IMG/VR virus record: IMGVR_UViG_3300049215_000529 | Coordinates: 1-64,000 of that record | Reading direction: 5' to 3' (one strand) | DNA length: 64,000 nucleotides | Shown here: positions 4,032 to 19,198 of the stretch, piece by piece | Position numbering within the stretch: position 1 is the stretch's first letter | Layout of the letters: every line of letters starts with the position of its first letter | Program-made: the position numbers and the translations under genes | The notes under the pieces: generated by a model | Database searches by the model: none | The model's input: only the letters and a program-made list of their open reading frames with translations | Told to the model about the DNA's origin: nothing

Positions 4032-4075
4032 AATTATAGTCCAGATTATGCATATACACCTGCTATATAACAACG

Positions 4076-4145: not shown

Positions 4146-5159
4146 TCATGCACCAATTACGACCGATTTTCTGCCCGCTGCACAACCACGAGGGTTCACA
4201 ATTGCTATACCAATTATTTCGCTTACTACCCAGCCCAACTTTAGTTGCTTTGGTTCGTCTGCTGGAAGAACTTCGATGTCCTGGCGGATTGGCATAACAC
4301 CAACGAACTCAGGATCTGCAGCACCATAGATGGTTCCAGGTGGAACGATCTTAGATACCATGATGTCAGTACCCCAGATGTGGGCGTAAAGACCAGTTTG
4401 TAGAACTTCACGCATGGTGACAGGATCGAAATCTCCGCCGCCTACGCCTTGTCCACCGCCTGAACCCCACTTAAGGATATCAGTGAACTCGTTGATGTTC
4501 ATGAAGTACTTGGTGGTTACCAAGTCCCAACGATCAATCTGTTGCTTGATTTCGACAAGATCTCTCTTTAGAAGACCTGCGTCTGCGATATCGGTTAGGA
4601 CGTTTTCGACAGAAGCTGCTGCATCAAGAGCTGCGAAGATGTTTGCATCTTCTTGAGCCATGATTTCTTGACGAGCCTTCTGAACGGAACGGTCGATAAC
4701 GTTGAATCTACGACGCTTGACTTCAGCGATACGGACGGTTGGGTTTGCGTAAATTTCGAATTCAGGAACGACTACACGGTCACCGAATACTCTGGATTCT
4801 GGACCAGCACCGTTGGAGGAGATGACAACTGCGGCAACATCGATATCTCTATCGTAAGTTGGCATAGCACCTTGTGGAAGAGGATCGACAACCAAGGCAC
4901 GACGTGCGATACCGTGGTAATCAAGGTTTCTACGGATTGGGTTTGCCATTGCCTGAGCAAGAGCAATCTTTCCGTCTTGGGTCATAATAGCGCGGGAGAT
5001 TAGCTCATCACGCTTTTCGTCGCTCAAGGATGGTTGACCAGCAAGACCCATGTTAGCTGGAGTGTTCTCTTCAAGAACTGCTGCGTACTTAACTAGAGTC
5101 TGTAGTGCATCCTTAAGGGATGAGGCATTCATTGCGCCTTGGTTGTTGAACATATTCAT
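4146..5159 (-). CDS. Major capsid protein (HK97 fold)
   Basis: 337 aa; HK97-like pattern (IARRALVVDPLPQG; FEIYANP; AQEDANIFAALDAA); strong codon bias, AGGAG SD, terminator behind it; downstream of protease and decoration genes. Confidence 0.85.
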   Translation of the reverse strand: MNMFNNQGAMNASSLKDALQTLVKYAAVLEENTPANMGLAGQPSLSDEKRDELISRAIMTQDGKIALAQAMANPIRRNLDYHGIARRALVVDPLPQGAMPTYDRDIDVAAVVISSNGAGPESRVFGDRVVVPEFEIYANPTVRIAEVKRRRFNVIDRSVQKARQEIMAQEDANIFAALDAAASVENVLTDIADAGLLKRDLVEIKQQIDRWDLVTTKYFMNINEFTDILKWGSGGGQGVGGGDFDPVTMREVLQTGLYAHIWGTDIMVSKIVPPGTIYGAADPEFVGVMPIRQDIEVLPADEPKQLKLGWVVSEIIGIAIVNPRGCAAGRKSVVIGA

Positions 5160-5299: not shown

Positions 5300-6010
5300 T
5301 TATAGTGATGGAGGGCTGAACCAGAAGGTTGCGAATGCAAACTGACGAGGGCCAACTGAGCTAACGTTACCAGATGGGCTGTTTAGAGCTGCAACTAGTC
5401 TGTTAGGGGTGGTTACTAGAGAACCGTTGGACTCGAAGTCAACGAAACGTGCTACTGCTGGAGCGCCACCTACTGCTGCTGGAGAACCAACTGGGGTTAG
5501 AAGACCAGTAGAGGTGTAGGTTAGCTGAGTTCCAACGTCCAAAGTGGTGTTGGTTGGTTGCAAGCCGGTAGAAGTTGCGGTATCGCATGCATCAAGAGAT
5601 ACTGCGTACAAGCCTGGCTTGTCCCAGCAAGTTACCTTGCCAGAGCCGGTTGCGGTGTGAGGTCCTAGAAGAGCAGTGGAAGGAATGGAAGATGCTGGTC
5701 CGTATGAGGTTTGTCCAACAACACCACCTACGACAGAGCCGAATAGGGTTCCATATCCAGTGATACCTTCATCTGCAAGGAACAATGGGCGGGAAGTGCT
5801 CAAAAGGTTAGAGTGAGTTACTACTGGACGCTTTTGAACGCCTGATGGGTTAACATAACCGTCAAGAGAGTCAGCAGCTGACTTGTCACCTGGAACAGGG
5901 ACAGAAATCAAAGTAACGATTTCGCCACCCTTTAGGGTCAAGTAATCGCTATCATAACCATCAAATTGTCCAAGTGGTTGTGTACCTGGTTGTAGAAGTT
6001 TTAAAGACAT
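5300..6010 (-). CDS. Putative capsid decoration/cement protein
   Basis: Directly upstream of MCP; Gly/Thr/Pro-rich; GSGKVTCW motif shared with 13143-13832. Confidence 0.55.
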   Translation of the reverse strand: MSLKLLQPGTQPLGQFDGYDSDYLTLKGGEIVTLISVPVPGDKSAADSLDGYVNPSGVQKRPVVTHSNLLSTSRPLFLADEGITGYGTLFGSVVGGVVGQTSYGPASSIPSTALLGPHTATGSGKVTCWDKPGLYAVSLDACDTATSTGLQPTNTTLDVGTQLTYTSTGLLTPVGSPAAVGGAPAVARFVDFESNGSLVTTPNRLVAALNSPSGNVSSVGPRQFAFATFWFSPPSL

Positions 6011-6150: not shown

Positions 6151-7410
6151 TTATATTAGTCCGATTTCTCCTAGTTGTTTTTCTAGGTCTTCGGCTCCTT
6201 GATCAATCTGCTCTTTGGATGTAGGTGGTTTTCCAGTAGTTGAGGCTGTGCCGCCCTCTTCCTCTGAACCAAACATTTCCTGGCTCTTATAAGATGCCTC
6301 AGTAAGATCCTTGGTAAGAGAATCTTCATGTGATTTCGCCTCTTTGAGTGCTTTATTGATATTTTGCATATCACCCATAAAGGTCTTAAGGGCATGAGCA
6401 ACATCGTCAAAATCGTCTGCTACCAATCCCTTGCCACCATGAAGAAATGGATCGACAACCTTCATTGCCCAACCCTTTTCTACAATCTGTCTTTGCTTGT
6501 AGCTTGGGTTATCAAAATCTTGTTCAATCTTCTGGAAATATGGAAGAATTTTGTCGGTAGCGCTACGGAAAGATTTATATGCATTAACAATTGCGTTTGT
6601 TTCTGGCTTCTTGATAGCTTCTAGCAATTCACCAGCATCTTTTGGTTTTTCTAGCTGATCAATATATGGCTCAATTGACTTATACAAATTATAGTAACCG
6701 GCTAGTTTGTTCTTGAAATTTTGCATCTCTTGAATAAACTCTGGTCTATAATTGTAGCCCGCACCAACACTAGTCTGAATTGAATCGTTTGATTCAATCA
6801 AATCGTCAATTTCGGCAACTAATTTTTGATAGTCTTGCTCGAAACCATCACTAAAAAATGCCATATGATTCTTGAGATAAATTCCGCCAATAAGGGCGGC
6901 AGCTGCTGCAACACCAGCAATAACTAAAGGAGCAACAGCTGTCTTAGTAAGTGGCTGGCTAGCTTGTAGTAAGCACAAGTCAGCTAATGCCATTAACTTA
7001 TCTTGATTCTTGTTATCTAAATCGTTAGCGACTCTAACCAAAGACAGCACCAATTCCTGAGCGTATTTGCGCTGCGTAGATAAACCATCTGGAGTTTTCA
7101 TTACGATATGAATATTGATGTTCTGGCGCTCGTTTTCGTTCTCTACTAAACCATTAAGTTTGTCGTAGGAAGGTAAAATAACCACAGAGTTTGGATGAGC
7201 GTCTTCCATAATATTGTGCTCATATTCCATGTCTTTAGGAGTGTTTGGTTTTACGCCATACAGAGCTTCGATAGCAGAAATGTCTAATGAATCGGCTCGA
7301 TGAGTTTTCTCTAATTTCTTCTTAGAATCCTCAGAATCGTTCGAGATCATTCCCTTTTCTTGGGCTATTTTGACAAAACTGTCGAAGACGTCGCTTTTCA
7401 TATTATTCAT
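6151..7410 (-). CDS. Putative internal head protein with a hydrophobic segment
   Basis: KxA motifs; hydrophobic VAPLVIAGVAAAAALIGGIYL; N-terminal region similar to 11041-12195. Confidence 0.5.
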   Translation of the reverse strand: MNNMKSDVFDSFVKIAQEKGMISNDSEDSKKKLEKTHRADSLDISAIEALYGVKPNTPKDMEYEHNIMEDAHPNSVVILPSYDKLNGLVENENERQNINIHIVMKTPDGLSTQRKYAQELVLSLVRVANDLDNKNQDKLMALADLCLLQASQPLTKTAVAPLVIAGVAAAAALIGGIYLKNHMAFFSDGFEQDYQKLVAEIDDLIESNDSIQTSVGAGYNYRPEFIQEMQNFKNKLAGYYNLYKSIEPYIDQLEKPKDAGELLEAIKKPETNAIVNAYKSFRSATDKILPYFQKIEQDFDNPSYKQRQIVEKGWAMKVVDPFLHGGKGLVADDFDDVAHALKTFMGDMQNINKALKEAKSHEDSLTKDLTEASYKSQEMFGSEEEGGTASTTGKPPTSKEQIDQGAEDLEKQLGEIGLI

Positions 7411-7428
7411 ACCTTATAATGTATAGGT

Positions 7429-8541
7429 TTATGGAGCCTTTGCCGCCACATCATCGATAAAATGGTCTACTATTTTTTTCTTAGAAGTAAACATTCTAGG
7501 AATGAAAACTATAGGTCCACCAGCAGATGTATGGTTATACCAATCAATAGCATCCGTAATAGCTTGAAATCCTGCCGTACTTCTGATATTAGACTCTTGA
7601 CCATCTAATCCACCGTAAACTTCTTTTGCAAAGTTAACCAGCATATTCTCAACGCTTTCTTTATTATTTGGAATATTTTCTATCCAATTATTATCAGTAC
7701 CATTAAAATTCTCTTCATGATAAGATGGGTTGAGTGGGAACTTAGTTTGCTTGGCAGTTATGGTTGGTGCGGTTGTAGTTGGAGCAGAAGTTTGTGCAAC
7801 TGGTTTTCCTTTTTGCATAGTATTGTCTAATGCGTTTGGTCTGCCCAATAAATGATTAATCATGTCACCAGCTACCATGAACCCAGCAGATGCTAACAAT
7901 ACTTTGAAAATTAGCCCTAGAACTCTAGACAAAATACTGCTCGTCGCGCTCTTTTTAACTGAGTACCTGGAGAATATAGATCCCAGATTCATGCCTCGAC
8001 GTTGTTGACCACTTTTCAACAACTGATCGTACTCATTCAAAGCTAATTTTAAATGCTTCGCTTCTCTAATAAGAACATATGACTTTGATTCTAATTCCTT
8101 TTGAGCTTCGGCTGCCTCTTCCTCAGTAGCTGGCTTTGCATGTTCTTGTACCGAGCTGGAAACCATTTCATCTACTTGTGAAGAGGATAGTGGTTTCCCC
8201 AATCCGATAGCGCTCTTAACTTTTTCATAAATGGATTTTAAAATTCCGAAAACATCGATATGGAAAACGGCTGCTGCTAAGCTTAACAGCGCAGTAAACC
8301 ACCATGGCAACCCAATCATTCTAAGTGTTGTGAATATTAGACCAGGTGCCAATAGTTTTAACAAACTATTGGTCTTATCATTTGGATCGATTGAGTTATC
8401 AGCGTATTGCTTTACCTTACCAACAAGATCTGACATAACGCCGCCAGTTTGGGCACTTTTAGATAGACCATCACCATATGCTAGTGCCTCCACTATCATT
8501 ATGTCTACATACAAACTGATGCGGTCTTGTGCATGACTCAT
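7429..8541 (-). CDS. Putative internal virion protein with 2-3 hydrophobic segments
   Basis: LLAPGLIFTTLRMIGLPWWFTALLSLAAAVF and VLGLIFKVLLASAGFMVAG; SKSAQ motif. Confidence 0.5.
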   Translation of the reverse strand: MSHAQDRISLYVDIMIVEALAYGDGLSKSAQTGGVMSDLVGKVKQYADNSIDPNDKTNSLLKLLAPGLIFTTLRMIGLPWWFTALLSLAAAVFHIDVFGILKSIYEKVKSAIGLGKPLSSSQVDEMVSSSVQEHAKPATEEEAAEAQKELESKSYVLIREAKHLKLALNEYDQLLKSGQQRRGMNLGSIFSRYSVKKSATSSILSRVLGLIFKVLLASAGFMVAGDMINHLLGRPNALDNTMQKGKPVAQTSAPTTTAPTITAKQTKFPLNPSYHEENFNGTDNNWIENIPNNKESVENMLVNFAKEVYGGLDGQESNIRSTAGFQAITDAIDWYNHTSAGGPIVFIPRMFTSKKKIVDHFIDDVAAKAP

Positions 8542-10031
8542 TTTACGTTAACTGCCTGTCTAAGATTTTGCAAGTCGCCAGAGTTTCTTGTGTATATAGA
8601 ACGATCATTTGGTGTTCTTCCAATTTGACCTAATACATAAGCCTTTTGGTTATCATCTAACTGACCAACATAGGTTGCATAAAATGCCTCTACAACGCTA
8701 CGCGTGGTATCAAGAATATCATTTAGTTCATCCAATGCTGGCATGAATTGCTTACCAGGATCTTTAAGCATGCTGAAAAATTGACGAGGATACATACCAA
8801 GAGGAATTATTTTTTCGCCCTGACGCATATAGGTCGAACTAAATCTTCTCATAGAACCATCAGTTGATCCTATTTGTTGCATTGCGGTGCCATTGTTGCT
8901 CATAATTTGCTGTACTAATCCAAAGAAGCTATCAATTCTGTCGAAATTGATATCTCTAATGGAAAACGGCAAAGTACTAATGATGTTGTTCAGAATTTGT
9001 GGGGACACCTTTTGGGCACCGGCGCCTGCCTGTTGTGTTTGCTTGTCTTTCCCGGCTGGAGCTGTTGTGGTTGTTCCTGCTGCTAGTGAACAAGCTTTTC
9101 CATCAGGTCCCTGCAATGTTGGAGCCACTTCAGTAATTTTCTTAACGAAAGCAGTGTATTTTTTCTCCAACTCTGGGGTGGTAGCCTTGGTTCTTAGCAA
9201 CCATTGTGCCTTAGCATATAATGTTCTTGCAACTACACAGAAGTCGAATTGCGGATGATTGATTCCCAATGGTCCGCCCTCACGTCCAGGAATCTCAACG
9301 GAAATACCATTATTATTCACCCAAGCTTTGATTCCAGCAGCAGTAGAGACGTCTCCAAAAGTTAGAACCTTATCTCCATCTTTGTTGTAATACTTGTAAT
9401 CTAGAACTTGTGGAAAATTAGTCAAAACTTCATTAGCTGGCAACGTTTTTTCTGGTGGAGTGTACTTCTCACTTAAACCAGATTCTAATTGAGTGTTGGC
9501 TTGCTGAATAATTTTGCGCAACTGCACATCCATAACTGGATTTGGTCTAGCTGCCAACTGAGCCTGCAAAGACTGAATGTACTTATTAAGTAGGTCTTTG
9601 TTTACGTAAAATCCTCTGGTAACACGACTTCTATCCTCTACTTCCAACAAGCCAGCGTTTGGCTCTAGTTGATAAAGTTGATAGTCTTCGCTATTTGGAT
9701 CTTCAGCCAAGTCATAAGCAACTCTCTGACCATCTACGGTTATCTTGTTTTGCATCAAGAAATCTGTTAGCGCACCAAGTCCCTCTAGATTGACTACAGT
9801 CAACTGTGGATCGCCTTCATTGAATCCCTTTTCATGAGAAATTTCGGCTGGAGCATTTGGATCTTTGGTACCAGGAATTTGATCTGCCAAACTATCTAGT
9901 AGCGATCTCAAAGTAACAAGAGATTGGTTGTCAGGCGCAGCTTGACCCTTCTTTGAGAATTTGTTCTCAAAGTCCTCAGCATGTTTGACTAGTTGGTCGA
10001 TTAATTTTTGGTCATCATAAATGATAGACAT
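8538..10031 (-). CDS. Hypothetical protein (putative internal virion protein)
   Basis: 497-aa ORF, ATGA overlap with the next gene. Confidence 0.5.
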   Translation of the reverse strand: MSIIYDDQKLIDQLVKHAEDFENKFSKKGQAAPDNQSLVTLRSLLDSLADQIPGTKDPNAPAEISHEKGFNEGDPQLTVVNLEGLGALTDFLMQNKITVDGQRVAYDLAEDPNSEDYQLYQLEPNAGLLEVEDRSRVTRGFYVNKDLLNKYIQSLQAQLAARPNPVMDVQLRKIIQQANTQLESGLSEKYTPPEKTLPANEVLTNFPQVLDYKYYNKDGDKVLTFGDVSTAAGIKAWVNNNGISVEIPGREGGPLGINHPQFDFCVVARTLYAKAQWLLRTKATTPELEKKYTAFVKKITEVAPTLQGPDGKACSLAAGTTTTAPAGKDKQTQQAGAGAQKVSPQILNNIISTLPFSIRDINFDRIDSFFGLVQQIMSNNGTAMQQIGSTDGSMRRFSSTYMRQGEKIIPLGMYPRQFFSMLKDPGKQFMPALDELNDILDTTRSVVEAFYATYVGQLDDNQKAYVLGQIGRTPNDRSIYTRNSGDLQNLRQAVNVK

Positions 10032-10039
10032 CGTATTCC

Positions 10040-11038
10040 TTATTGGTTTGCTGCGGGATGAACTTGTTGTCTAAGCTGGGCGATAATCATTTGAAGAGGT
10101 AGCTCTGGCAAATTTTGTTGCTGCCATTTTTTCAAAGCATCCATACTAACAAGATCTTTGACGTTGATAACAGCTGCCTTATCTTTGGATCTTACCTGAA
10201 AACCGTTGGCAAAGGCTTGTGACAATCCAGCAAGCTGAGCTTCAGTCAACTTAGGGGCTTGCTTTTTGTAAGTAACAAATGGCTTATCAGATTCAATAAA
10301 AGCTCTGTAGGCAGGCTTTTCCAAAATGCCATCTTTGATTTCTTTGTACATTCTCTGAATTGCTCTTAAGTGCTTAGCGATGCGGGGAGCTAGTTCAGCT
10401 TTTTCTGCAGCATTAATGTCGTTAGCATCTTCTGGAACTTCATTCTTAAGACCTTCAAGATTGGACTCTGTATATGACTTCACTGGCAAGTTAAAATCTC
10501 TTGCTAGATTCAACATAGCAAATGCAAATGCATAAGCATTGTGAAGAGCTGCGTTCGTACGAGGACCCCACGATCCATCAGCGGTAAGTTCGCCGCCCTT
10601 AGGGTTACCAATTCTCTTCATAGTGTCCATAACTACACTTAGACGAGTTGGATCGGATGGCTTCTTTTGATTCAAATTTTGCTTAGTAGGATCTGGATTG
10701 AACTCAACTCCTGGTACATCAGAGTTTCTAAGATAGTTCTTGGTAATGAAATCTCCGAACGAATCTCTGCCAACAGCTTCCTGTTGTTGTCTTTTATCAC
10801 CAGTAAGACCTTCTAAATGAATTTGCTGAGTAACCGCTTGACCCAAATTAATGAGTTCCTGTTGCATGGCTTTAACAGTAGGATCACCAACGACACCACC
10901 ACCAGCATGACCAGCAGGTGCAGTAGTTCCTGGATGATAGGAAGTTGCGCTGTAACCAGTTGGTGGTGGAGGTGGAGGAGCAGCAATCTTCTGAATCTCC
11001 TGCACTATTTTTTTAAAGTCTTTTTTAGGCGAAGTCAT
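10040..11038 (-). CDS. Putative virion protein with peptidoglycan-binding-like motif
   Basis: DPTVKAMQQELINLG ... ADGSWGPRTNAAL resembles PG_binding_1 with an insertion; likely start 11038 (track 11062). Confidence 0.5.
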   Translation of the reverse strand: MTSPKKDFKKIVQEIQKIAAPPPPPPTGYSATSYHPGTTAPAGHAGGGVVGDPTVKAMQQELINLGQAVTQQIHLEGLTGDKRQQQEAVGRDSFGDFITKNYLRNSDVPGVEFNPDPTKQNLNQKKPSDPTRLSVVMDTMKRIGNPKGGELTADGSWGPRTNAALHNAYAFAFAMLNLARDFNLPVKSYTESNLEGLKNEVPEDANDINAAEKAELAPRIAKHLRAIQRMYKEIKDGILEKPAYRAFIESDKPFVTYKKQAPKLTEAQLAGLSQAFANGFQVRSKDKAAVINVKDLVSMDALKKWQQQNLPELPLQMIIAQLRQQVHPAANQ

Positions 11039-11040
11039 AT

Positions 11041-12195
11041 TTATGCCTTTGTCTGAACCCATTGATTGTAAAACTGCTCAACCTCTTGTTCATAAGTAGC
11101 CAACTCTTTTTCCAAGATAGTTGCCATCTGAGCTTCTTGAGTTTCTGGAACCTTACCCATTCTATTGGCAAGATCAGTTAAACTAGCTGACTCTTCTTTA
11201 ATCCAAGCCATTGCGGACGAATTACGAGCAACCGATCCTATCAATCCTGCTGACTGTAATTTTTGTCTTAGAGTTCCAATTCTCTTATAAAGACTTGATA
11301 GAGGAGAAGCTTCTGGAGTATACTCTTTCATTTGCTGAGTGACAGAAGGTTTATCCTGCTCAGTACCAGTGTCATTTTCCACCGGAGTACCAGCATCAAC
11401 ATCTCTGCGTTTAGCAATGGCTTGATCTGCCAAAGTGTTTGCTTGACGGAAAGCGCCCTGAACTCTACTCCAAGTATAATCAGAAAGTCCTCCCAATCCA
11501 TAAGTTCCACCACTTAAAATAGATGGATCCAATCTCTCATATAATATCTTTAGTTGCTTTTTAATTTCATTGATATTGTAAACGGTAGGATCTCCTGCAA
11601 GGCTTGAGATGCTGTTGACCCAATTGTTAATAGAAAAAGTAAGCTCAGGATTAGATGCCTTAGCAATTGCATTTACTTGATTCACAATACCATTAGCTAA
11701 GCGATTGACTTCGGCAAGTGATGCTGATTGTGCAAAAACATTCTTGACAGCCGAAAGCACTTCGGAAGCAGAAGATAGTTTACCAGTTGGATCCTTCTCT
11801 ACCATTGTGACATGCTTCAAGTGCTGATCTAAGATATCTTCAAAGACGGCTTCGCTACTATCAACGTCTTCTAGTTTGTGGCTTCCCTTGGGATGTGCGG
11901 CATGCACCAAGTCATCACCAGTTTCTTTATTTACTTCATAAAGAGTTTGTACCTGTTTGTATGCAAGTAGTTTTCCTTCTAGCTCAGTAGCATACTTATC
12001 AAAACCGGCGTGTCTCAAACCAGAACATAGCTTGAGTACATTTTCAGTTAAGCTCTCAGAAGGAGATAGATCCAATTCAGAGGCAGCTGCTACTTTAGTC
12101 ATAGGCTGGTCCTTGACCAATCCCTTGTCTCTAGCGAGCTTCTCTAAAGAACGCATAGTGACAGAATCTTCAAAATTGGTATGTTTAAAACTCAT
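11041..12195 (-). CDS. Putative internal head protein, paralogous N-terminus to 6151-7410
   Basis: EKLARDKG / AAHPKG / VEKDPTG match VKIAQEKG / DAHPNS / VMKTPDG. Confidence 0.5.
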   Translation of the reverse strand: MSFKHTNFEDSVTMRSLEKLARDKGLVKDQPMTKVAAASELDLSPSESLTENVLKLCSGLRHAGFDKYATELEGKLLAYKQVQTLYEVNKETGDDLVHAAHPKGSHKLEDVDSSEAVFEDILDQHLKHVTMVEKDPTGKLSSASEVLSAVKNVFAQSASLAEVNRLANGIVNQVNAIAKASNPELTFSINNWVNSISSLAGDPTVYNINEIKKQLKILYERLDPSILSGGTYGLGGLSDYTWSRVQGAFRQANTLADQAIAKRRDVDAGTPVENDTGTEQDKPSVTQQMKEYTPEASPLSSLYKRIGTLRQKLQSAGLIGSVARNSSAMAWIKEESASLTDLANRMGKVPETQEAQMATILEKELATYEQEVEQFYNQWVQTKA

Positions 12196-12299: not shown

Positions 12300-13073
12300 T
12301 TACTCAGTTAGCGCATTCAATCGCCCATACCTCAACATACGCAAACCATGCTTGTTGCAATATCTGATGCCATCGATAATCTTATACTTTGCCTTACCAG
12401 ATACGTCGCAACCATCAACGGAGCACTTGCGAGAATAATCAATTCGTTTATCCCATGCTTCCTTGGCGCTTTCTGATTTCTTTTGTTTGGTATCTTCTGT
12501 GTCTTTGATGCCGATATGAGATTCGGACATTTTTTGTCTTAACTCTTCAGTATATTCGATAGGGTTCTCAAGACGTGCTTTACGATGCAATTCTTTTTCT
12601 TCTTCTGTTACGATGCGACCCTGGGCAGGATGACCCTTTTCAAAGATTTGTTGTTGAGTGGCTTCTGATTGTTTTTTACTAATTTCAGCCCTTTTCTCTA
12701 CAGAAAGTGAGGCGTGCCAATCTCGCATAGCTTTCAACCAGGCTTCCGATTTAGGTGCATTAAATCCTCCAAGAGCAACATTATAGCCCTTAGGAACTAA
12801 ACAATCATATTGAGAAACTAATACAGTTTCTGTATCATTAACATCTTCCCATGATGTACATGCTGCTATAATTTCAAAATCAAAAGTATCACTACCATAT
12901 TTTTTAATGGCACGCGAAATTACCATAGAAGGCTGATCTTGTGTAGCCATATATTTATGTCGATACCATCGTTTATCTGGCTCCACCGTTTGCCCGATAT
13001 AAATTTTTCCATTAATTTTATTAGTAATACGATAAAGATAGTGAATTGTAGTGTTTTGTTCGTTTGTCAGCAT
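12300..13073 (-). CDS. Free-standing GIY-YIG homing endonuclease with NUMOD3-like repeats
   Basis: YLYRITNKINGKIYIGQT, RWYRH, E, GYN motifs; TEELRQKMSESH / TEDTKQKKSES repeats; GGAG SD before ATG 13073. Confidence 0.85.
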   Translation of the reverse strand: MLTNEQNTTIHYLYRITNKINGKIYIGQTVEPDKRWYRHKYMATQDQPSMVISRAIKKYGSDTFDFEIIAACTSWEDVNDTETVLVSQYDCLVPKGYNVALGGFNAPKSEAWLKAMRDWHASLSVEKRAEISKKQSEATQQQIFEKGHPAQGRIVTEEEKELHRKARLENPIEYTEELRQKMSESHIGIKDTEDTKQKKSESAKEAWDKRIDYSRKCSVDGCDVSGKAKYKIIDGIRYCNKHGLRMLRYGRLNALTE

Positions 13074-13116
13074 ACTTGACTCCAAAACACTACATATCAG
13101 CTCGTTTCCTTTTGAC

Positions 13117-13174
13117 CAACCAGAGCACTTCAATCATCGGGTTCAGAACCACAAAACTTCCAACATTGGGTTCA
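13117..13174 (-). repeat. Imperfect 29-bp tandem duplication of the 3' end of gene 13143-13832
   Basis: TGAACCCAATGTTGGAAGTTTTGTGGTTC then TGAACCCGATGATTGAAGTGCTCTGGTTG (22/29 identical). Confidence 0.8.
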
Positions 13175-13832
13175 TTGGAGTTGGTGGTGCCGTCACCATA
13201 GCAACAGCTGGATGAATAGAACTTGGGCGTCTAGTAGTCAAAAATCCATTTTCGCTAACATACAAATTAGCACGAACTGGATATTGCTGATTAGTTTCAT
13301 ATTGATCAGTTTGGAAAAACATTCTATTAAACCAAACTGTCATTCTGCCAGAACCCTGGGTGCTATCATCACCCGGAATATTAGCCACTTGATAGGTATA
13401 GTTAACTATGGTTCTGATAGCATTTGGCTGACCAGTACCAGTTAAATCAAAATTCAATAGCGTACCCGCTAAGAAGGTGATAACACCATTGTTAGGGTTA
13501 AGCACTACATCAATAGTAGAATTAAAACTACTAGATACTATATTAGGCTTTCTTAATTCTGCTTTAATGTCAATAGGGGTCACTAACTGACCACCAGGTC
13601 CAGGAACACCAATAGCAGGAACAATAACAACTTCGTTCCAAGAAACGTTAGTAAAAGCCCTGGTTTTGATATCATCAATGATACCAAGGGGAGCGGTACC
13701 ATTGCTAACAGTTGCCATTACTTGATTACCAATAACAGTTAGTTCGGCAATCATTCCTGGTTGAAATTCGGTAGACGGGTCACAAATAAAACTGGCGGGG
13801 AGCGTATTGCCCACTTGTACTAAGCGCAACAT
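13143..13832 (-). CDS. Putative capsid decoration-like protein, paralog of 5300-6010
   Basis: MLRLVQVG vs MSLKLLQPG; TQGSGRMTVW vs ATGSGKVTCW; ATG at 13832 (track 13841). Confidence 0.5.
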   Translation of the reverse strand: MLRLVQVGNTLPASFICDPSTEFQPGMIAELTVIGNQVMATVSNGTAPLGIIDDIKTRAFTNVSWNEVVIVPAIGVPGPGGQLVTPIDIKAELRKPNIVSSSFNSTIDVVLNPNNGVITFLAGTLLNFDLTGTGQPNAIRTIVNYTYQVANIPGDDSTQGSGRMTVWFNRMFFQTDQYETNQQYPVRANLYVSENGFLTTRRPSSIHPAVAMVTAPPTPMNPMLEVLWF

Positions 13833-13963
13833 TATTGCCACCCTTGCTTGTTAGAATCTGTTTTCATGAATATCCTTAGCCACTATTACCGTCTCACTGA
13901 TATTATATATCTATTTATGGAGAAGATTGCGAAAACTATAGCTAAAGCACGCACAACTAATTA

Positions 13964-14515
13964 TTAATCTTTTTCATCCTCAAAATCAGATTGACCTAAT
14001 GGATGTTCAACAATCTCAATTGCTTCATCATCAATATCAACATCCAGCAAATCATCAGCTTTGCCATCATCTGCCATATTGAATGGAGTTCCATGTTCCA
14101 AAAGATTTTTAACCTGTTTTTCAGGCGTTAATCCATGGGTATGAGGATCATGAATCTTGGTAGGGTTCTTTGGATGTGGAGGCTTTCCCCTAGCATCGTC
14201 CTCGTCGCCGTCCAATAGGCTCTTAAACGAGATTTCCTCCTTAGGAAGCTCCTTGGACTCCTTTGGCTCTTCTAACAAACTTTTAAATTCAATTACGTCA
14301 CCTGGCTCAATACCATCACGAGCAATTTTAGCTAAAAGTTTAAGAATACGATCAGAATGGGCAGTTAATCCTGCTTCATCTAGGATATCCATAGCGGAAT
14401 GAAGATAATCTGCTGCCTTAACAAGATTTTCCATACCTTGTTTCTCTGCATGAGTTTTTAGTTCACGCTGCATTCCAGCAATTAATTCATCTTCAAATAC
14501 ACTTTTCTTAATCAT
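13964..14515 (-). CDS. Hypothetical head-module protein
   Basis: FEDE N-terminus and helical module shared with 14512-14757. Confidence 0.55.
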   Translation of the reverse strand: MIKKSVFEDELIAGMQRELKTHAEKQGMENLVKAADYLHSAMDILDEAGLTAHSDRILKLLAKIARDGIEPGDVIEFKSLLEEPKESKELPKEEISFKSLLDGDEDDARGKPPHPKNPTKIHDPHTHGLTPEKQVKNLLEHGTPFNMADDGKADDLLDVDIDDEAIEIVEHPLGQSDFEDEKD

Positions 14516-14757
14516 TTGGATCCTGAAACAGAAGAAGTCTTGCCGGATAGGTCTTTAGCCAATCCTTGCAAGACTTCGGTAATTTCTGCGGCTTCTGCTG
14601 GCATACCAGCTTGTTCAAAGATCTCAGCAGCAGCATTTAAACAATTAACTGCTTGTGCTAGCTTATTGAATCCATGCTTGTTTTCAACTTGTGCTTCTAC
14701 AAGTTTATTTTCCATAGAACGATAGATCTCGTCTTCAAAGCTAGCGGTTTTGAACAT
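14512..14757 (-). CDS. Small head-module protein, paralog of 13964-14515
   Basis: MFKTASFEDEIYRSM vs MIKKSVFEDELIAGM; AGGA SD. Confidence 0.6.
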   Translation of the reverse strand: MFKTASFEDEIYRSMENKLVEAQVENKHGFNKLAQAVNCLNAAAEIFEQAGMPAEAAEITEVLQGLAKDLSGKTSSVSGSK

Positions 14758-15619: not shown

Positions 15620-18600
15620 TTAGAACAGTCTCTTAGAGGTCTTAGCAAATGCTGCGGACAATTGATTCCAATCATCAGACTCAGTTGGAGCAGCGCCATT
15701 AACTTCACCAGAACCTAGCATACCAACTAGTGGTAGGCGACCAGCTTCCTTGCGTAGCACTGGAGCATGCTTTGCAACTACTCTCTTCAAGGACTCGAAG
15801 CTATCATCATTAAACTTCATGATTTCATCGACCTGAGAAGAGACTGCGGCTCTATCACTGTGGCACAAACCACGTTCAACCATGTCATATGCTAGCTCGT
15901 AAGAACGTGCCAACTTGACTCTGTACTTGCCAAGCTCTGCTTCCAATTGAGCCTTGACGTGTTCCTTGACCAATTCGGTTGCGAATTCGCCACCACCATC
16001 AACTTCACCGAAGTACTTCTTGTAGTAAGCAACTGCATCCTTATCCAAACCTTCTGCTACTAGAGCATCTAGGTCCTTAGGATCTAGCTTGCCTTCAGAG
16101 ACAAGCTTGTAAATGGCTTCTGCTTCCTTACGTACCTTAGGTGGAGCTTTAGCGACGTCCATCATTTGCTTGTTGATTTCTGGAAGAGTTTCAACTTTTC
16201 CTAGGCTGTCAGATGGCTTGGTGTCAAGCTGGGTCTGACCATCAGCAAGGCGATCTGCTTCTTGCAACATATCGCTGAACTTAGCCTTGGACATATCTTG
16301 AATTTCGCCATCGTCTTCTTTGCCAAGAGCATCAGCTGCTAGCTTAGCACGAAGAGCGGCACGACCTTCTTTGCTATCGTAGGAGGCAGTAACAACTGCA
16401 GTTCCCTTTGGTAGCATGTCTAGAGCCTTTGGATCCTTAATGTCAACGTTTACTTCGTTAGCATCGTCGGTTGGCAATGCAGCATCCAAATCAAGAGCAG
16501 GGTCTGCATCAACAGAGTGCTCGTCGCTCATCAAATCCTTAACTGCATCCAAGTCAGCATTGGTCTCTTGGACTAGATTCATCAAGTCATCATCCGAATG
16601 ACTATCGTGTTCGGTTGTCATAGTTTCTCCCTCAGCTAGTGCTTCAAGTTCTGCTTCCATTTCGGCGCGCTTGACGATAGCCTGGGTACCACGAGCATAC
16701 TTGACGAAAGCAGTCATAAGCTGGAATCCGTCAGCAACAGCGGTCTTGGCTTCGTTCATTGCATCTTGTACGAGGGTGCCAACTAATTCCGTATTGGACG
16801 GGCTGACAGCGCCTTTATCGTAAAGACCTGCGATCATTTCAAGTTCAGATTGATGATCGTTAAGCTCTGCAACGGCTTCCTTCATAGCGTCTGTAAGGGC
16901 TCCGTTCAATTGCTTTCTTAGAGTGTTTAGAGTGGCAGTGCTAAAGCTATCAGAAGCTGTGGTTGCGCCCATTTCTGGAATTTCTCCACCTTCCATTGCG
17001 CCCATTTCTGCTTGCTCACCAGTCAAGGCTCTAACGCCTTCAACTAGGTCAGAAGATAGGTCTCTAACTTTTTCAGCTAGACTTAGTACGTTTTCCTTTG
17101 GATCACCAGACTTGCCAGTGTCTTCTGCTTGGGGCATAGGCTCACCAGATGGACCAGCCTCTGGTGCTGGAGCAGCAGGCTCAGCTTGTGCGGTCTTGTA
17201 TAGTTTGGCAACTTTCTCAGCGCCTTCCTTCTTGACCTTAGCAATCAAAGTGCTACCAAATTCCTTGGTTGCAATGTGGTCGTACATTAGTTCAGTACGT
17301 CCACCAGAAAGCTCGTCAACAGATGCGGTAAGAAGAAGCTTGTCGCCTAGGAATACTTCCCATGCGCTCTTAGCTAGGTTCTGAGTTCCGTCTTCGTTTG
17401 CTGCCTTGACGAATCTTGCTCTCAAGGATGCTCTTTGTAGCATTTCCTTACGCTTCTTTTCGTCAGGAGTTTCTGCGGAAGCTGGAGATGGATGCATTCC
17501 ATCAACTGGTCCGACGCCTGGGAATGGCTTTTGTCCGACCATTTGCTTGTCTTCGTAATCACGAAGTTGTTCGTTAAGCTTGTCTTTTGGATACTTAACT
17601 TGACCAGGAGTTGGGGTGTTAACATTACCCTTTTCCAAACCATTCTGGAAATAAGCTTGCTTGTTTTCTAAAGCACCCTTAGCTAAGTTAACAATTGCTT
17701 GACGGCGAATTGCTCTCTCTTCTGCTTCTGCGCGAGCAAGCATCTTTTTACGCTCTAACTCGTTTGCAGGGTCAGCAGACTCTGGGCTTGGATGCATTCC
17801 ATCAACAGGACCTACGCCTGGGAACGGAGATTGACCAACCATTTGCTTGTCTTCTTTTTCGCGAAGCTCTTCATTTAGTGGGTCCTTAGTATATTTTGGT
17901 TGACCTGGAGTAGGCTCGTTAACGCCGCCAGCACCCTGGTAGTAACCCTTTTTATTTAGATCTTGTGTTCCAGACATAGTTTCCTCTTGTGTTTGTTTTG
18001 TAGAAGTGTTTGCTAACTTATCCAAGGTTTGTTTCATTTGGCTCAATTTAGCTTCAATGGTCTTGGTGACCTCGCGAAGCTCGGCGATAGTATCTGCTCC
18101 AACATTGGCAGAGGCATATCTTGCAGTTGGAGGAGCCAATCCTGAATCGGCTGCAGGTCCAGTTAAACCAGGACCGGTCATTTGATCAGATGCCAGTTGA
18201 TTACCAGGTTCTTCCATATTTTCTTCATTTGAAATAGAAGATTGAAGTTTTTGGAAGTCCTCGATTGCCTTATCAACATCCTTTTTAAAGCTTTCAAGAT
18301 CTTTAGCAGTAACGCTTACATTGGTTACTTTTCCTGGATCTTTAGAAAACCCGTCGCCACCCTTATTTTCAAAAGAGAGATTGGCTACATAAGTATCTTC
18401 AGCCAATTTTTCTAGCTCTTTTTGCTTTGTTTCAACATAGCTATTAAGAGTGTTAGCGGCTGCAATGATGTGTTTGATGCTAGCTTTTGGATCGGCACCA
18501 TTAACAACAATGGATAGTTCAATTGGATTTAAGTCTACGTTAATTTCGCCGTAGCAGCTCTTGGTCTTCATATGGGTGCAGAAGTCTTGTTCGGCACGGG

Positions 18601-19198
18601 CAACACGTCCACAATCAGAGCAAATAGCGCGTCCGACAGCAGTACCCATAGAAACACAGTTAGAATATCCAGTGGCAACCTTACGAGCCAAATCTGGGTA
18701 ATTATGTTTATCTAATGCACATAGCGCGATAACCCTCTTGAGCCCGCGATCGTAGTAGGTATCAACAATAAAGCCTCTTACATGATCTACCGAGCTGGAT
18801 TTATGATCGATGCAAAGAGGCTTGCCTACCCACTTCTTATATGCTTTTACGAGTTCTTCCTCGGGGAATATGTCGCCATTAGAATTCTTATAAGGCTTAA
18901 TGCTTGGATCATTACTCATCCAGCGCCATGAGCCATCCTGCTTATTCCAGCCCACTTCAACGTGTTCGCCCTTGGCGTTTAGCTTAGGAGTGCCATCGTC
19001 ATTAAGCGCGGCAGCTTCAGCAGCATGCATCATAACAGCAGAAAAATAAAGGAAATCTTCAGCTTTAGGGGCAATCTTTTTTAGATTCGCAGCTACTTTT
19101 CTAAAGTTCTCTAGAATTTCTGGATTAACGGCAGGAATACAGGATGCTGTATTTTCAATCCTGTTAATCTCTATGAGTTCACCTTGTTTGATAAACAT
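15620..19198 (-). CDS. Prohead protease fused to a long scaffold-like polyprotein
   Basis: N-terminal NGDIF, CIDH (His), VSMGT (Ser), CSDC..FCTH, ELSIV..GADPKA as in HK97-type maturation proteases; ~900 aa acidic helical C-terminus; between portal and MCP. Confidence 0.8.
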   Translation of the reverse strand: MFIKQGELIEINRIENTASCIPAVNPEILENFRKVAANLKKIAPKAEDFLYFSAVMMHAAEAAALNDDGTPKLNAKGEHVEVGWNKQDGSWRWMSNDPSIKPYKNSNGDIFPEEELVKAYKKWVGKPLCIDHKSSSVDHVRGFIVDTYYDRGLKRVIALCALDKHNYPDLARKVATGYSNCVSMGTAVGRAICSDCGRVARAEQDFCTHMKTKSCYGEINVDLNPIELSIVVNGADPKASIKHIIAAANTLNSYVETKQKELEKLAEDTYVANLSFENKGGDGFSKDPGKVTNVSVTAKDLESFKKDVDKAIEDFQKLQSSISNEENMEEPGNQLASDQMTGPGLTGPAADSGLAPPTARYASANVGADTIAELREVTKTIEAKLSQMKQTLDKLANTSTKQTQEETMSGTQDLNKKGYYQGAGGVNEPTPGQPKYTKDPLNEELREKEDKQMVGQSPFPGVGPVDGMHPSPESADPANELERKKMLARAEAEERAIRRQAIVNLAKGALENKQAYFQNGLEKGNVNTPTPGQVKYPKDKLNEQLRDYEDKQMVGQKPFPGVGPVDGMHPSPASAETPDEKKRKEMLQRASLRARFVKAANEDGTQNLAKSAWEVFLGDKLLLTASVDELSGGRTELMYDHIATKEFGSTLIAKVKKEGAEKVAKLYKTAQAEPAAPAPEAGPSGEPMPQAEDTGKSGDPKENVLSLAEKVRDLSSDLVEGVRALTGEQAEMGAMEGGEIPEMGATTASDSFSTATLNTLRKQLNGALTDAMKEAVAELNDHQSELEMIAGLYDKGAVSPSNTELVGTLVQDAMNEAKTAVADGFQLMTAFVKYARGTQAIVKRAEMEAELEALAEGETMTTEHDSHSDDDLMNLVQETNADLDAVKDLMSDEHSVDADPALDLDAALPTDDANEVNVDIKDPKALDMLPKGTAVVTASYDSKEGRAALRAKLAADALGKEDDGEIQDMSKAKFSDMLQEADRLADGQTQLDTKPSDSLGKVETLPEINKQMMDVAKAPPKVRKEAEAIYKLVSEGKLDPKDLDALVAEGLDKDAVAYYKKYFGEVDGGGEFATELVKEHVKAQLEAELGKYRVKLARSYELAYDMVERGLCHSDRAAVSSQVDEIMKFNDDSFESLKRVVAKHAPVLRKEAGRLPLVGMLGSGEVNGAAPTESDDWNQLSAAFAKTSKRLF
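17429..17953 (-). repeat. Internal ~75-aa duplication in the protease/scaffold
   Basis: EDKQMVGQxPFPGVGPVDGMHPSP occurs twice (about 17729-17953 and 17429-17663). Confidence 0.85.

What the first reader, a model, noticed from the sequence alone, without database searches (positions are those of the whole stretch)
6151..12195. Five-gene block resembling an ejected membrane-entry apparatus, with a hydrophobic peptide directly after a K-x-A site
Seen: in 6151-7410, TKTA is followed at once by VAPLVIAGVAAAAALIGGIYL. 7429-8541 has 2-3 hydrophobic helices, 10040-11038 has a split PG-binding-like motif, and 6151 and 11041 share an N-terminal region. None has an obvious signal peptide. Inference: maturation cleavage would expose an N-terminal membrane-inserting peptide, like fusion-peptide priming, and the block may build a trans-envelope conduit or early infection compartment.
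Basis: inference. Interest (0 to 1): 0.6.

Follow-up and report, generated by a model that had tools for sequence, protein, structure and literature searches.

The report
Megaphage head proteins with cleavage-primed membrane helices
Five neighbouring genes in the head-assembly operon of an uncultured ~430-kb phage (a distant relative of Bacillus phage G) most likely encode proteins packed inside the capsid, and trimming by the phage's own maturation protease would leave one of them starting with a membrane-inserting helix, an arrangement already proposed for one protein of Salmonella phage SPN3US.

Summary
The sequence observations hold. All five ORFs exist on the minus strand. In gE (6151-7410), TKTA is followed at once by a 22-24-residue hydrophobic helix. 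gD (7429-8541) has three hydrophobic helices. gA and gE share a homologous N-terminal domain. None has a signal peptide. The "PG-binding" motif in gB is only sub-threshold.

The window is the start of a 204-kb contig of a megaphage whose closest cultured relative is Bacillus phage G. The block lies between a protease-scaffold fusion and the decoration and major-capsid genes. It is syntenic in more than 40 related contigs but diverges fast (28-46% identity, against 91-100% for the capsid protein).

"K-x-A" belongs to a wider motif, Φ-x-K-x-A-[QSAG]. The motif sits 15-35 residues from the N-terminus of gA, gB, gD, the capsid protein, the protease and others (7 of 13 head-module genes against 9 of 262 elsewhere). 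It is about five-fold over-represented in the scaffold domain. It recurs in the phage G protease and the Tunturi_5 capsid protein. It is most likely the maturation-protease site.

In 119 of 120 gE homologues, K-x-A/G directly precedes the hydrophobic helix. No fold or family match was found. Virion presence, cleavage and ejection remain untested. The closest precedent is SPN3US gp47.

The parts
11041..12195 (-). gA, 384 aa. The conserved N-terminal domain (aa 1-150) is paralogous to the gE N-domain; the C-terminal half is variable and helical. No hydrophobic helix.
12088..12102 (-). gA candidate protease site M32-T-K34-V-A36 (family consensus L-x-K-[TK]-A-[SA]; K 100%, A 95%).
10040..11038 (-). 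gB, 332 aa, a confident all-helical model (pLDDT 86) with no known fold. The N-terminal helix ends in I-Q-K-I-A-A (10982-10990). The conserved D-G-x-W-G-x-R-T patch (10544-10579) resembles PG-binding domains only below threshold.
8538..10031 (-). gC, 497 aa, the fastest-evolving member (median 28% identity). No hydrophobic helix. It carries a looser N-terminal F-S-K-K-G-Q-A variant of the motif (9942-9959).
7429..8541 (-). gD, 370 aa. Features in order: the N-terminal site L-S-K28-S-A30-Q (8452-8460; K 100%, A 95%); a hydrophobic hairpin at aa 60-101 (8239-8364); an internal V-K-K-S-A site at aa 195-199 (7945-7959), where the family consensus is L-T-K-x-A about 30 aa upstream of the third helix; a third hydrophobic helix at aa 207-228 (7858-7923); and a conserved C-terminal domain at aa 280-370.
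6151..7410 (-). gE, 419 aa. It has a conserved N-domain (aa 1-152, 6955-7410) and a C-terminal helical bundle (aa 188-380, pLDDT about 90). The family has 567 clusters at 50% identity in metagenomes and no named relative.
6937..6948 (-). gE T155-K156-T157-A158: a candidate internal maturation-cleavage site, in predicted coil at the end of the N-domain.
6865..6936 (-). gE hydrophobic helix aa 159-182 (VAPLVIAGVAAAAALIGGIYLKNH). Across homologues it is 25% Ala and 13% Gly. Net flank charge is +1.6 on the N side and -0.5 on the C side.
15620..19198 (-). Context: a 1192-aa protease-scaffold fusion. Residues 34-247 are 36% identical to the phage G gp19 head maturation protease. The acidic helical C-terminal part carries 15 Φ-x-K-x-A motifs. 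The N-terminal F-R-K-V-A-A lies at 19088-19105.
4146..5159 (-). Context: the major capsid protein (54% identical to phage G gp27). It has a 44-residue N-terminal extension containing L-V-K24-Y-A26-A (5079-5096), which is invariant in 60 homologues.
5300..6010 (-). Context: a 236-aa Gly/Thr/Ser/Pro-rich protein directly upstream of the capsid gene, in the position of the phage G decoration protein gp26. No detectable homology to gp26. No K-x-A motif.

Best explanation
gA-gE are internal head proteins of a phage-G-like megaphage. They are co-transcribed with the protease-scaffold, decoration and capsid genes.

Most of them start with a short amphipathic helix ending in Φ-x-K-x-A-[Q/S/A/G]. The capsid protein, the protease itself and the scaffold domain carry the same signal. 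I take this to be the recognition site of the head maturation protease, and possibly also a capsid-targeting leader (inferred).

In gE the site lies after a 152-residue conserved N-domain. Cleavage there would release that domain as a long propeptide. It would leave a mature fragment of about 260 residues whose first residues are an Ala/Gly-rich membrane-type helix followed by a helical bundle. gD would lose about 30 N-terminal residues and keep three hydrophobic helices.

The processed proteins stay in the DNA-filled head. They have few further sites, unlike the scaffold. They leave with the DNA at infection, and gD and gE insert into the host cytoplasmic membrane to help genome entry or early takeover. 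gA, gB and gC are soluble partners, and gB possibly contacts the cell wall.

Shown: the gene order, synteny, motif distribution and conservation, hydrophobic helices and predicted secondary structure. Inferred: cleavage, packaging, ejection and membrane insertion.
For: Head-operon position. The order is terminase, portal, protease-scaffold, the block, a decoration-position gene, then capsid, with the only strong terminator after the capsid gene.

The same gene order holds in more than 40 related contigs.

Fast divergence of the block against a nearly invariant capsid protein, as expected of host-interacting or internal proteins.

The Φ-x-K-x-A-[QSAG] motif occurs at residues 8-45 in 7 of 13 head-module genes against 9 of 262 others, Fisher p 7.5e-7. 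K and A are conserved at 84-100% inside otherwise variable linkers.

The scaffold domain has 15 motifs against 3.2 +/- 1.75 in 2000 shuffles, with none of the shuffles reaching 15.

The same motif sits at the equivalent N-terminal place of the phage G protease gp19 (LVKTAA) and portal, and in the capsid protein of Tunturiibacter phage Tunturi_5 (LLKSAA).

gE: K-x-A/G directly precedes the hydrophobic helix in 119 of 120 homologues. The site is in predicted coil between helices. Distant family members keep only the N-domain plus 'LADxC..KKxA', followed by different C-terminal parts that again contain a Gly/Ala-rich hydrophobic stretch. This is modular, as expected of a propeptide plus cargo.

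The mature parts of gA-gE carry 0-2 further motifs, unlike the scaffold.

Precedent: in SPN3US gp47 a 111-residue propeptide is removed by the prohead protease and the mature fragment starts with a predicted TM domain. That protein is an essential candidate ejection protein in a highly diverged gene slot (PMC5694885).
Against: There is no experimental datum for this clade; no member is cultured.

The motif was defined after looking at these proteins, so the Fisher p-value is optimistic. K-x-A is low in information and also lies within conserved helices (gE K14, gA K19) that need not be cut.

No homology or fold match to any known ejection, core or inner-body protein was found.

The block is absent from the head regions of phage G and Tunturi_5, so no virion proteome can be borrowed.

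A strongly hydrophobic internal helix could send gE to the membrane of the producing cell rather than into proheads.

The gE N-domain is poorly modelled (pLDDT 40-50), so shielding of the helix is not shown.

A gD-gE complex prediction gave no verdict.
Confidence: 0.45

Rival explanations
1. gA-gE are assembly-only core or scaffold accessory proteins. They enter the prohead through the shared N-terminal leader, help build the very large shell, and are then cut and expelled before or during DNA packaging. The hydrophobic helices serve self-association inside the core rather than membrane insertion.
For: The genes lie directly after the protease-scaffold gene. The proteins are acidic, helical and fast-evolving like scaffolds. 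They share the processing motif with the scaffold.
Against: The scaffold domain is dense in motifs (15 in 1192 aa), whereas the long C-terminal parts of gA-gE have 0-2. Large fragments would therefore survive, which is unlike a scaffold cleared as small peptides. The hydrophobic helices are conserved with charged flanks and KD values of 1.9-2.3, in the membrane-spanning range.
Confidence: 0.2
2. gD and gE are inserted into the cytoplasmic membrane of the producing cell. There they tether or nucleate prohead assembly, as T4 proheads start on the membrane with gp20 and gp40 (my own knowledge). Cleavage at K-x-A next to the helix would release the prohead-bound N-domain from its anchor.
For: The internal hydrophobic helix has a positive N-flank and a negative C-flank (+1.6 / -0.5), which fits an N-in membrane anchor. 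The cut site lies exactly at the domain-anchor junction. The N-domain is the most conserved part and is duplicated in gA.
Against: A protease acting inside a closed prohead would have to reach a site at the membrane surface. The 240-residue acidic C-domain would have to cross the membrane without a signal peptide. Distant relatives have 20-40 residues between the site and the hydrophobic stretch.
Confidence: 0.12
3. The block is a lysis or membrane-modifying cassette (holin-, spanin- or cell-wall-binding-like), or a superinfection-exclusion cassette. Phage G carries an endolysin and two small TM proteins in the same slot.
For: In phage G, endolysin gp22/23 and the N-terminally hydrophobic gp24 and gp25 lie between the protease region and the decoration and capsid genes. 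gB has a sub-threshold PG-binding-like patch. gD has three hydrophobic helices.
Against: There is no muralytic domain and no holin- or spanin-like size or architecture. The proteins are 330-500 aa, acidic and helical. They share the N-terminal leader and motif with capsid, protease and scaffold proteins.
Confidence: 0.05
4. Φ-x-K-x-A is not a cleavage site. It is the end of a shared amphipathic targeting or interaction helix, for example one that binds scaffold or shell. The proteins are then not processed there, and the gE helix never becomes N-terminal.
For: The motif lies within predicted or conserved helices in several cases (gE K14, gA K19, gB, capsid protein). Cleavage has not been observed. 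Known prohead proteases of T4, phiKZ and SPN3US cut after Glu (PMC5694885).
Against: The five-fold enrichment all along the scaffold domain fits a degradation signal better than an N-terminal binding helix. In gE the motif sits in predicted coil at a domain boundary. The protease carries the motif at its own N- and C-terminal regions in phage G, the usual places of auto-processing.
Confidence: 0.15

Closest known systems
SPN3US gp47 (and phiKZ gp86 / 201phi2-1 gp148): prohead-protease-processed candidate ejection proteins of giant myophages (PMC5694885)
   Same: Both are encoded among head genes. A long N-terminal propeptide (111 aa in gp47, about 158 aa proposed here) would be removed at the phage's protease motif. 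The mature fragment begins with a predicted TM helix. Both sit in a rapidly diverging gene slot. The propeptide is proposed to target the protein into the prohead.
   Different: No sequence similarity was detected. The motif differs: A-x-E for SPN3US and S/A/G-x-E for phiKZ, against Φ-x-K-x-A here. For gp47 the cleavage and virion presence were measured; here they are inferred. Here the N-domain is duplicated in a second, TM-less protein (gA).
T4 internal proteins (IPI-III, Alt) with a capsid-targeting sequence removed by gp21 (my own knowledge; discussed in PMC5694885 and PMC9026906)
   Same: A short N-terminal leader shared by several packaged proteins ends in the protease motif. The same protease also trims the capsid protein and degrades the scaffold.
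   Different: The T4 leader is about 10 residues and ends in L/I-x-E. T4 IPs are small basic soluble proteins without membrane helices. No homology.
T7 gp14/gp15/gp16 and P22 gp7/gp16/gp20 ejection proteins, which form a trans-envelope channel (my own knowledge)
   Same: Several adjacent genes encode head-internal proteins, some with hydrophobic segments, thought to enter the host envelope.
   Different: No PHROG, Pfam, PDB-sequence or fold match. No lytic transglycosylase domain. Those systems belong to short-tailed phages and are not primed by a head protease. This phage is a relative of the contractile-tailed phage G.
Class I viral fusion proteins (influenza HA2, HIV gp41): cleavage-primed N-terminal fusion peptide
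   Same: A proposed proteolytic cut lies directly before an Ala/Gly-rich hydrophobic peptide that is followed by long helices.
   Different: This is analogy only. The best structural rows include gp41 HR1-HR2 mimics at Z about 10 (rmsd 4.1 A, 169 aligned). That is below the level of about 13 that the tool itself gives as meaningful for helical bundles. There is no envelope to fuse and no homology.
Herpesvirus UL26 / phage P2 gpO-type protease-scaffold fusions (my own knowledge)
   Same: The neighbouring 1192-aa protein joins a head-maturation protease domain to a long acidic helical scaffold-like part rich in the candidate cleavage motif. Herpes assemblin also cuts after Ala in a hydrophobic-x-Ala context.
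   Different: This concerns the context gene, not the block. Homology is to the phage G gp19 protease (36% identity), and no relation to assemblin was tested.

Membership tests
Protease-processed internal head / ejection proteins of giant phages (functional class: T4 IPs, phiKZ inner-body proteins, SPN3US gp47/gp53/gp54) | Encoded in or next to the head-morphogenesis module | tested here: met
   The block lies between the protease-scaffold gene and the decoration-position and capsid genes. The order is the same in more than 40 contigs.
Protease-processed internal head / ejection proteins of giant phages | N-terminal propeptide ending in the same cleavage motif as the capsid protein, the scaffold and the protease itself | tested here: met
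   Φ-x-K-x-A-[QSAG] occurs at residues 8-45 in gA, gB, gD, gE, capsid, protease and g14512 (7 of 13 against 9 of 262, p 7.5e-7). It is conserved in the families and enriched 15 against 3.2 in the scaffold. Sequence pattern only.
Protease-processed internal head / ejection proteins of giant phages | Cleavage actually occurs at that motif | not testable with these tools
   Needs mass spectrometry or in-vitro protease assays.
Protease-processed internal head / ejection proteins of giant phages | Present in purified virions and released into the host on infection | not testable with these tools
   No cultured member of the clade. The block is absent from phage G and Tunturi_5.
Protease-processed internal head / ejection proteins of giant phages | Sequence membership in a described family (e.g. 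the phiKZ inner-body Pfam family, or PHROG internal-virion families) | tested here: not met
   No Pfam or PHROG hit for gB-gE. gA has only a weak phrog_1283 hit, E 3.5e-4. tblastn of gE against 50,697 phage records found nothing.
T7 gp14-gp16-type ejectosome | Homology or shared fold with gp14, gp15 or gp16 | tested here: not met
   No family, PDB-sequence or fold match for gE, gB, gD or gA.
T7 gp14-gp16-type ejectosome | Cell-wall-degrading domain in one component | tested here: not met
   No lysozyme or transglycosylase domain in any of the five proteins.
PG_binding_1 / PG_binding_3 peptidoglycan-binding domains (gB) | Pfam score at or above the gathering threshold | tested here: not met
   13.0 bits against 23 (PF01471, residues 53-68) and 13.0 against 24.6 (PF09374, residues 146-166). 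4 of 33 homologues show a sub-threshold PF09374 hit.
PG_binding_1 / PG_binding_3 peptidoglycan-binding domains (gB) | Three-helix PG-binding fold | tested here: inconclusive
   Whole-model searches list only generic helical bundles with Z of 7.6 or less. The small sub-domain was not folded or searched alone.
Class I fusion-protein-like priming (analogy) | Cleavage site immediately N-terminal to a hydrophobic Gly/Ala-rich peptide | tested here: met
   K-x-[AG] lies -2 to +3 residues before the hydrophobic window in 119 of 120 homologues. The segment is 25% Ala and 13% Gly. The cleavage itself is untested.
Class I fusion-protein-like priming (analogy) | Downstream heptad-repeat helices forming a trimeric hairpin | tested here: inconclusive
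   The C-domain is a confident helical bundle. Its similarity to gp41 mimics, Z about 10, is within the background for helical bundles. The oligomeric state was not tested.
Holin / spanin lysis cassette | Small membrane proteins next to an endolysin | tested here: not met
   The proteins are 332-497 aa and there is no endolysin in 4-20 kb of the window.

The most novel reading that the evidence does not exclude
A whole lineage of soil and freshwater megaphages (phage G, Tunturi_5 and this clade) uses a previously undescribed maturation code, Φ-x-K-x-A, with the cut placed after Ala by inference. In this clade that code primes a packaged protein by unmasking a fusion-peptide-like N-terminus. 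gD and gE, with gA-gC, then form a dedicated membrane-entry device that carries a genome of about 430 kb across the host envelope. The 150-residue N-domain acts as an intramolecular chaperone and capsid-targeting module, re-used on different membrane-active cargos.
Probability: 0.2. Interest if true: 0.7.

Novelty: new variant of a known kind. Interest (0 to 1): 0.48.

Why it matters
How huge phages move half a megabase of DNA across the cell envelope, and what their many extra head proteins do, is largely unknown. Nearly all of these phages are uncultured.

If the reading is right, this locus supplies three things. First, a simple sequence signature (an N-terminal helix plus Φ-x-K-x-A) that flags packaged and processed proteins in hundreds of metagenomic megaphage genomes. 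Second, a candidate specificity for the phage-G-type head protease. Third, a concrete pair of membrane-active candidates (gD and gE) to test for genome entry.

If the reading is wrong, the block is still a conserved, family-less module of the head operon, and the motif enrichment still needs an explanation.

Tried and rejected
Searches that found nothing:
- Megablast of the block and tblastn of gE against 50,697 phage records.
- PHROG and Pfam scans of all five proteins. The only result was a weak gA hit to phrog_1283 (baseplate hub / tail length, E 3.5e-4), which I discount because the block lies in the head operon and the hit covers a low-complexity helical part.
- Profile searches of the gA, gB, gD and gE alignments against PDB sequences. 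These returned only designed helical bundles or noise.
- Foldseek PDB, VIA-align wide, BFVD and ESM-Atlas searches with the gB and gE models. There was no significant match. The single strong BFVD row is an uncharacterised protein of an uncultured phage. Rows for alpha-pore-forming toxins (XaxA, AhlB, ClyA; Z about 7) and gp41 mimics (Z about 10) are within the helical-bundle background.
- ESM Atlas look-alike searches for gD and gC.
- Family HMMs of the block against all ORFs of the phage G and Tunturi_5 head regions. No homologues were found, so no virion proteome could be transferred.

Other steps that led nowhere:
- The phage G capsid paper with the virion mass spectrometry (PMC7316594) is not held.
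- Complex prediction of gD with gE residues 159-419 gave no verdict (score 0.00). This is not evidence either way.
- The promoter scan within the block was at background level.

Readings considered and rejected:
- A tape-measure or tail role. The tail genes are elsewhere, and the window beyond 28 kb holds replication genes.
- A lysis cassette (see rivals).

Full report
WHAT THE WINDOW IS

The window is the first 64 kb of a 204,190-bp IMG/VR viral contig that CheckV rates 47% complete, which implies a genome of roughly 430 kb. Nearly all genes are on the minus strand.

The major capsid protein (4146-5159) is 54% identical to gp27 of Bacillus phage G. It is about 33% identical to the capsid protein of Tunturiibacter phage Tunturi_5.

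PHROG scans give the following order in the direction of transcription:
- large terminase, 26434-28296;
- portal, 24516-26375;
- several unknowns, including a tyrosine-phosphatase-like protein;
- a 1192-aa protein with a head-maturation-protease domain, 15620-19198;
- four smaller genes;
- a GIY-YIG homing endonuclease, 12300-13133;
- the five-gene block;
- a 236-aa protein, 5300-6010;
- the capsid gene.

Residues 34-247 of the 1192-aa protein are 36% identical (E 2e-33) to the phage G head maturation protease gp19. The remaining 930 or so residues are acidic and Ala-rich. I read this protein as a protease-scaffold fusion. The only strong terminator-like hairpin in 4-15.8 kb follows the capsid gene, at 4103-4074. 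DNA beyond 28 kb encodes replication and recombination functions. The block is therefore part of the head operon, not of a tail module.

THE OBSERVATION

All five ORFs exist as described.
- gE (6151-7410): T155-K-T-A158 is followed at once by VAPLVIAGVAAAAALIGGIYL. The Kyte-Doolittle 19-residue mean is 2.29.
- gD (7429-8541): hydrophobic stretches at 60-101 (two helices) and 207-225.
- None of the five has a hydrophobic N-terminus.
- gA and gE: pairwise BLASTP is only marginal. Profiles built from 20 and 39 homologues align over about 104 columns with 82% probability and E 1.1e-5. The shared N-terminal domain is real. gA carries an insert of about 45 residues after the first helix.
- gB 'split PG-binding-like motif': this corresponds to two sub-threshold Pfam fragments, PG_binding_1 at residues 53-68 and PG_binding_3 at 146-166, each 13 bits against cut-offs of 23 and 24.6. 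It is unproven. The D-G-x-W-G-x-R-T patch is nevertheless the best-conserved part of the gB family.

CONSERVATION

A scan of IMG/VR with the capsid protein returned 320 related stretches. In the 40 or so loci with enough upstream DNA, the order g13143 - (homing endonuclease present or absent) - gA - gB - gC - gD - gE - g5300 - capsid is invariant.

The capsid protein is 91-100% identical across these loci. The block proteins are far more divergent, with median identities of 45% (gA), 35% (gB), 28% (gC), 40% (gD) and 46% (gE).

gE has more than 462 relatives in the word-indexed search. An exhaustive profile search of 1.84 billion representatives found 567 clusters at 50% identity. None carries a name or a Pfam family of note.

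The block has no detectable homologue in the head regions of phage G or Tunturi_5. In those phages the corresponding slot holds other genes, including an endolysin and two small hydrophobic proteins in phage G.

THE K-x-A SITE IS PART OF A WIDER SIGNAL

In the family alignments, a conserved Φ-x-K-x-A (Φ = hydrophobic), usually followed by Q, S, A or G, lies in otherwise variable sequence 15-35 residues from the N-terminus of the proteins below.

| Protein | Site | Conservation |
|---|---|---|
| gA | K34 | K 100%, A 95% |
| gB | K17 of the 332-aa form | not itemised |
| gD | K28 | K 100%, A 95% |
| g14774 | K32 | not itemised |
| g13964 | K33 | not itemised |
| capsid protein | L-V-K24-Y-A-A | invariant |
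| gC | K-x-G-Q / K-x-A-Q | looser variant |

The protease-scaffold protein has F-R-K34-V-A-A.

Genome-wide, the strict pattern starting at residues 8-45 occurs in 7 of the 13 genes between 4146 and 19198, against 9 of the other 262 ORFs (Fisher p 7.5e-7). I defined the pattern after seeing these proteins, so this p-value is optimistic.

Two tests are more independent.
- The scaffold part of the 1192-aa protein carries 15 Φ-x-K-x-A motifs. Shuffles of its own sequence give 3.2 +/- 1.75, and none of 2000 reached 15. The genome-wide density is 0.0024 per residue (binomial p 3.8e-7).
- The same motif sits at the aligned N-terminal position of the phage G protease (L-V-K-T-A-A) and twice near its C-terminus, at the N-terminus of the phage G portal (M-A-K-Q-A-A), and in the N-terminal arm of the Tunturi_5 capsid protein (L-L-K-S-A-A).

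The signal is shared by capsid, protease, scaffold and neighbouring proteins, and is dense in the scaffold. That distribution is what a head-maturation-protease site looks like in T4, phiKZ and SPN3US, although those enzymes cut after Glu (PMC5694885). I therefore take Φ-x-K-x-A to be the likely cleavage signal of the phage-G-type protease. The exact scissile bond is not known. 'After Ala' is an inference.

gE AND gD IN DETAIL

In gE the motif lies at the end of the conserved 152-residue N-domain ('LADxCLxQ...K-K-x-A') rather than near the N-terminus. AlphaFold2 predicts this stretch as coil (152-160) between helices 137-151 and 161-182.

In 119 of 120 database homologues, a K-x-[A/G] ends within -2 to +3 residues of the most hydrophobic 19-residue window. 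The median KD of that window is 1.93. Its composition is 25% Ala and 13% Gly. Mean net charge of the flanks is +1.6 on the N side and -0.5 on the C side.

More distant family members share only the N-domain and the K-K-x-A. They then continue with unrelated C-terminal parts that again contain a Gly/Ala-rich hydrophobic stretch 20-40 residues further on. The N-domain plus site thus behaves as a module placed in front of different membrane-type cargos.

The gE C-domain (188-380) is a confident helical bundle with pLDDT about 90. The N-domain is poorly modelled.

gD has the N-terminal site, a hydrophobic hairpin, and a further internal motif in the family ('L-T-K-x-A' about 30 residues before the third helix). 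In the window copy the internal motif is V-K-K-S-A at 195-199. gD then has the third helix and a conserved C-terminal domain.

Apart from these sites, the long C-terminal parts of gA-gE carry 0-2 motifs. They would therefore survive processing as large fragments, unlike the scaffold.

WHAT IT IS NOT DEMONSTRABLY

None of the five proteins has a Pfam, PHROG, PDB-sequence or structural relative that would name it. The gB model is confident (pLDDT 86) but matches only generic helical bundles (Z of 7.6 or less). The gE bundle matches designed bundles and gp41 mimics at Z about 10, which the tool itself rates as background for helical proteins. There is no link to T7 gp14-16. A gD-gE complex prediction gave no verdict.

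MOST LIKELY MECHANISM

The proteins are made late together with the shell components. They enter the prohead through their N-terminal leader, or in gE and gA through the N-domain. There they are trimmed by the protease at Φ-x-K-x-A.

gE loses its N-domain and becomes a protein of about 260 residues that begins with a membrane-type helix. gD keeps three such helices.

The mature proteins stay in the filled head and leave through the tail with the DNA. gD and gE insert into the host membrane. gA, gB and gC are soluble companions.

Shown here: gene order, conservation, motif statistics, hydrophobicity and predicted secondary structure. Inferred: every biochemical step.

I put about 0.7 on 'head-internal proteins that carry the protease signal' and about 0.45 on the full chain, including ejection and membrane insertion.

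Rivals:
- assembly-only core proteins, 0.2;
- membrane tethers for prohead assembly that are released by the cut, 0.12;
- a targeting helix without cleavage, 0.15, which partly overlaps the others;
- a lysis or exclusion cassette, 0.05.

COMPARISON WITH WHAT IS KNOWN, AND NOVELTY

The closest described case is SPN3US gp47. It is an essential low-copy head protein whose 111-residue propeptide is removed by the prohead protease. [quoted passage not shown] Its gene sits in a highly diverged slot (PMC5694885). T4 internal proteins with their capsid-targeting sequence show the same logic on a smaller scale.

What appears new:
- the protein families themselves;
- the Lys/Ala-type motif of this protease lineage (I could not read the phage G capsid paper to check whether it has been reported there);
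- the placement of the hydrophobic helix exactly at the predicted neo-N-terminus;
- the re-use of the N-domain;
- the fixed five-gene module in a widespread uncultured megaphage clade.

I rate it a new variant of a known kind, of moderate interest. It would be clearly higher if the cleavage and membrane activity were confirmed.

Noticed in passing
window 15620-19198 (-): A 1192-aa protease-scaffold fusion. In phage G (gp19, 300 aa) and Tunturi_5 (gp331, 287 aa) the protease is a separate gene. The scaffold-like part contains a duplicated segment of about 73 residues (aa 426-498 and 526-598, 'PTPGQ.KY.KD.LNE.LR..EDKQMVGQ.PFPGVGPVDGMHPSP') and 15 Φ-x-K-x-A motifs.
   Followed up: partly
window 12300-13133 (-); also 3150-4073 (-): A GIY-YIG homing endonuclease sits between g13143 and gA. 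In related contigs it is present, truncated or absent at exactly this junction. A second endonuclease gene (phrog_4645) downstream of the capsid gene is likewise variable.
   Followed up: partly
window 20137-20907 (-): A tyrosine/dual-specificity-phosphatase-like protein (Pfam Y_phosphatase3, 28.4 bits against a cut-off of 22.2) lies inside the head module. It has L-D-K-A-A-G at residue 38 and could be a packaged enzyme.
   Followed up: no
window 13964-14515 and 14512-14757 (-): Two adjacent small acidic proteins are paralogues (BLASTP E 2e-10). They share with gA and gE an N-terminal 'x-F-E-D-E/S' start and the K-x-A motif near residue 30. They are further candidates for processed head-internal proteins.
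   Followed up: partly
window 4146-5159 (-), residues 1-44: The capsid protein has a 44-residue N-terminal extension that is conserved across the clade. The annotated phage G gp27 lacks it (the HMM match starts at profile position 44). It holds the invariant L-V-K-Y-A-A.
   Followed up: partly
window 13143-13841 and 5300-6010 (-): Two Gly/Thr/Ser/Pro-rich proteins of about 235 aa flank the block. They are weakly similar to each other (E 0.018) and well conserved (86% and 62% median identity). One or both may be decoration or auxiliary shell proteins. No detectable similarity to phage G gp26.
   Followed up: partly
window 1334-2569 (+) and 31564-32337 (-): A tRNA nucleotidyltransferase (CCA-adding-enzyme-like, phrog_2244, E 8e-70) lies on the opposite strand. 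A second, shorter protein matches part of the same family.
   Followed up: no
genome positions 35065-35784, 83342-83689, 92588-93121, 135457-135894, 136911-137318, 165018-165470, 181858-182289 and 190729-191067 (only the first lies within the window): Eight more ORFs outside the head module carry the strict motif within residues 8-45. The phosphatase-like gene at 20137-20907, listed above, is the ninth. They may include further packaged proteins, or they may be chance hits.
   Followed up: no
relatives P0221-P0268 of gE: Distant gE-family members replace the C-terminal bundle with other sequences. These feature glycine-zipper-like stretches such as GGxxGGxxGGxxG after the conserved N-domain and K-K-x-A.
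   Followed up: partly
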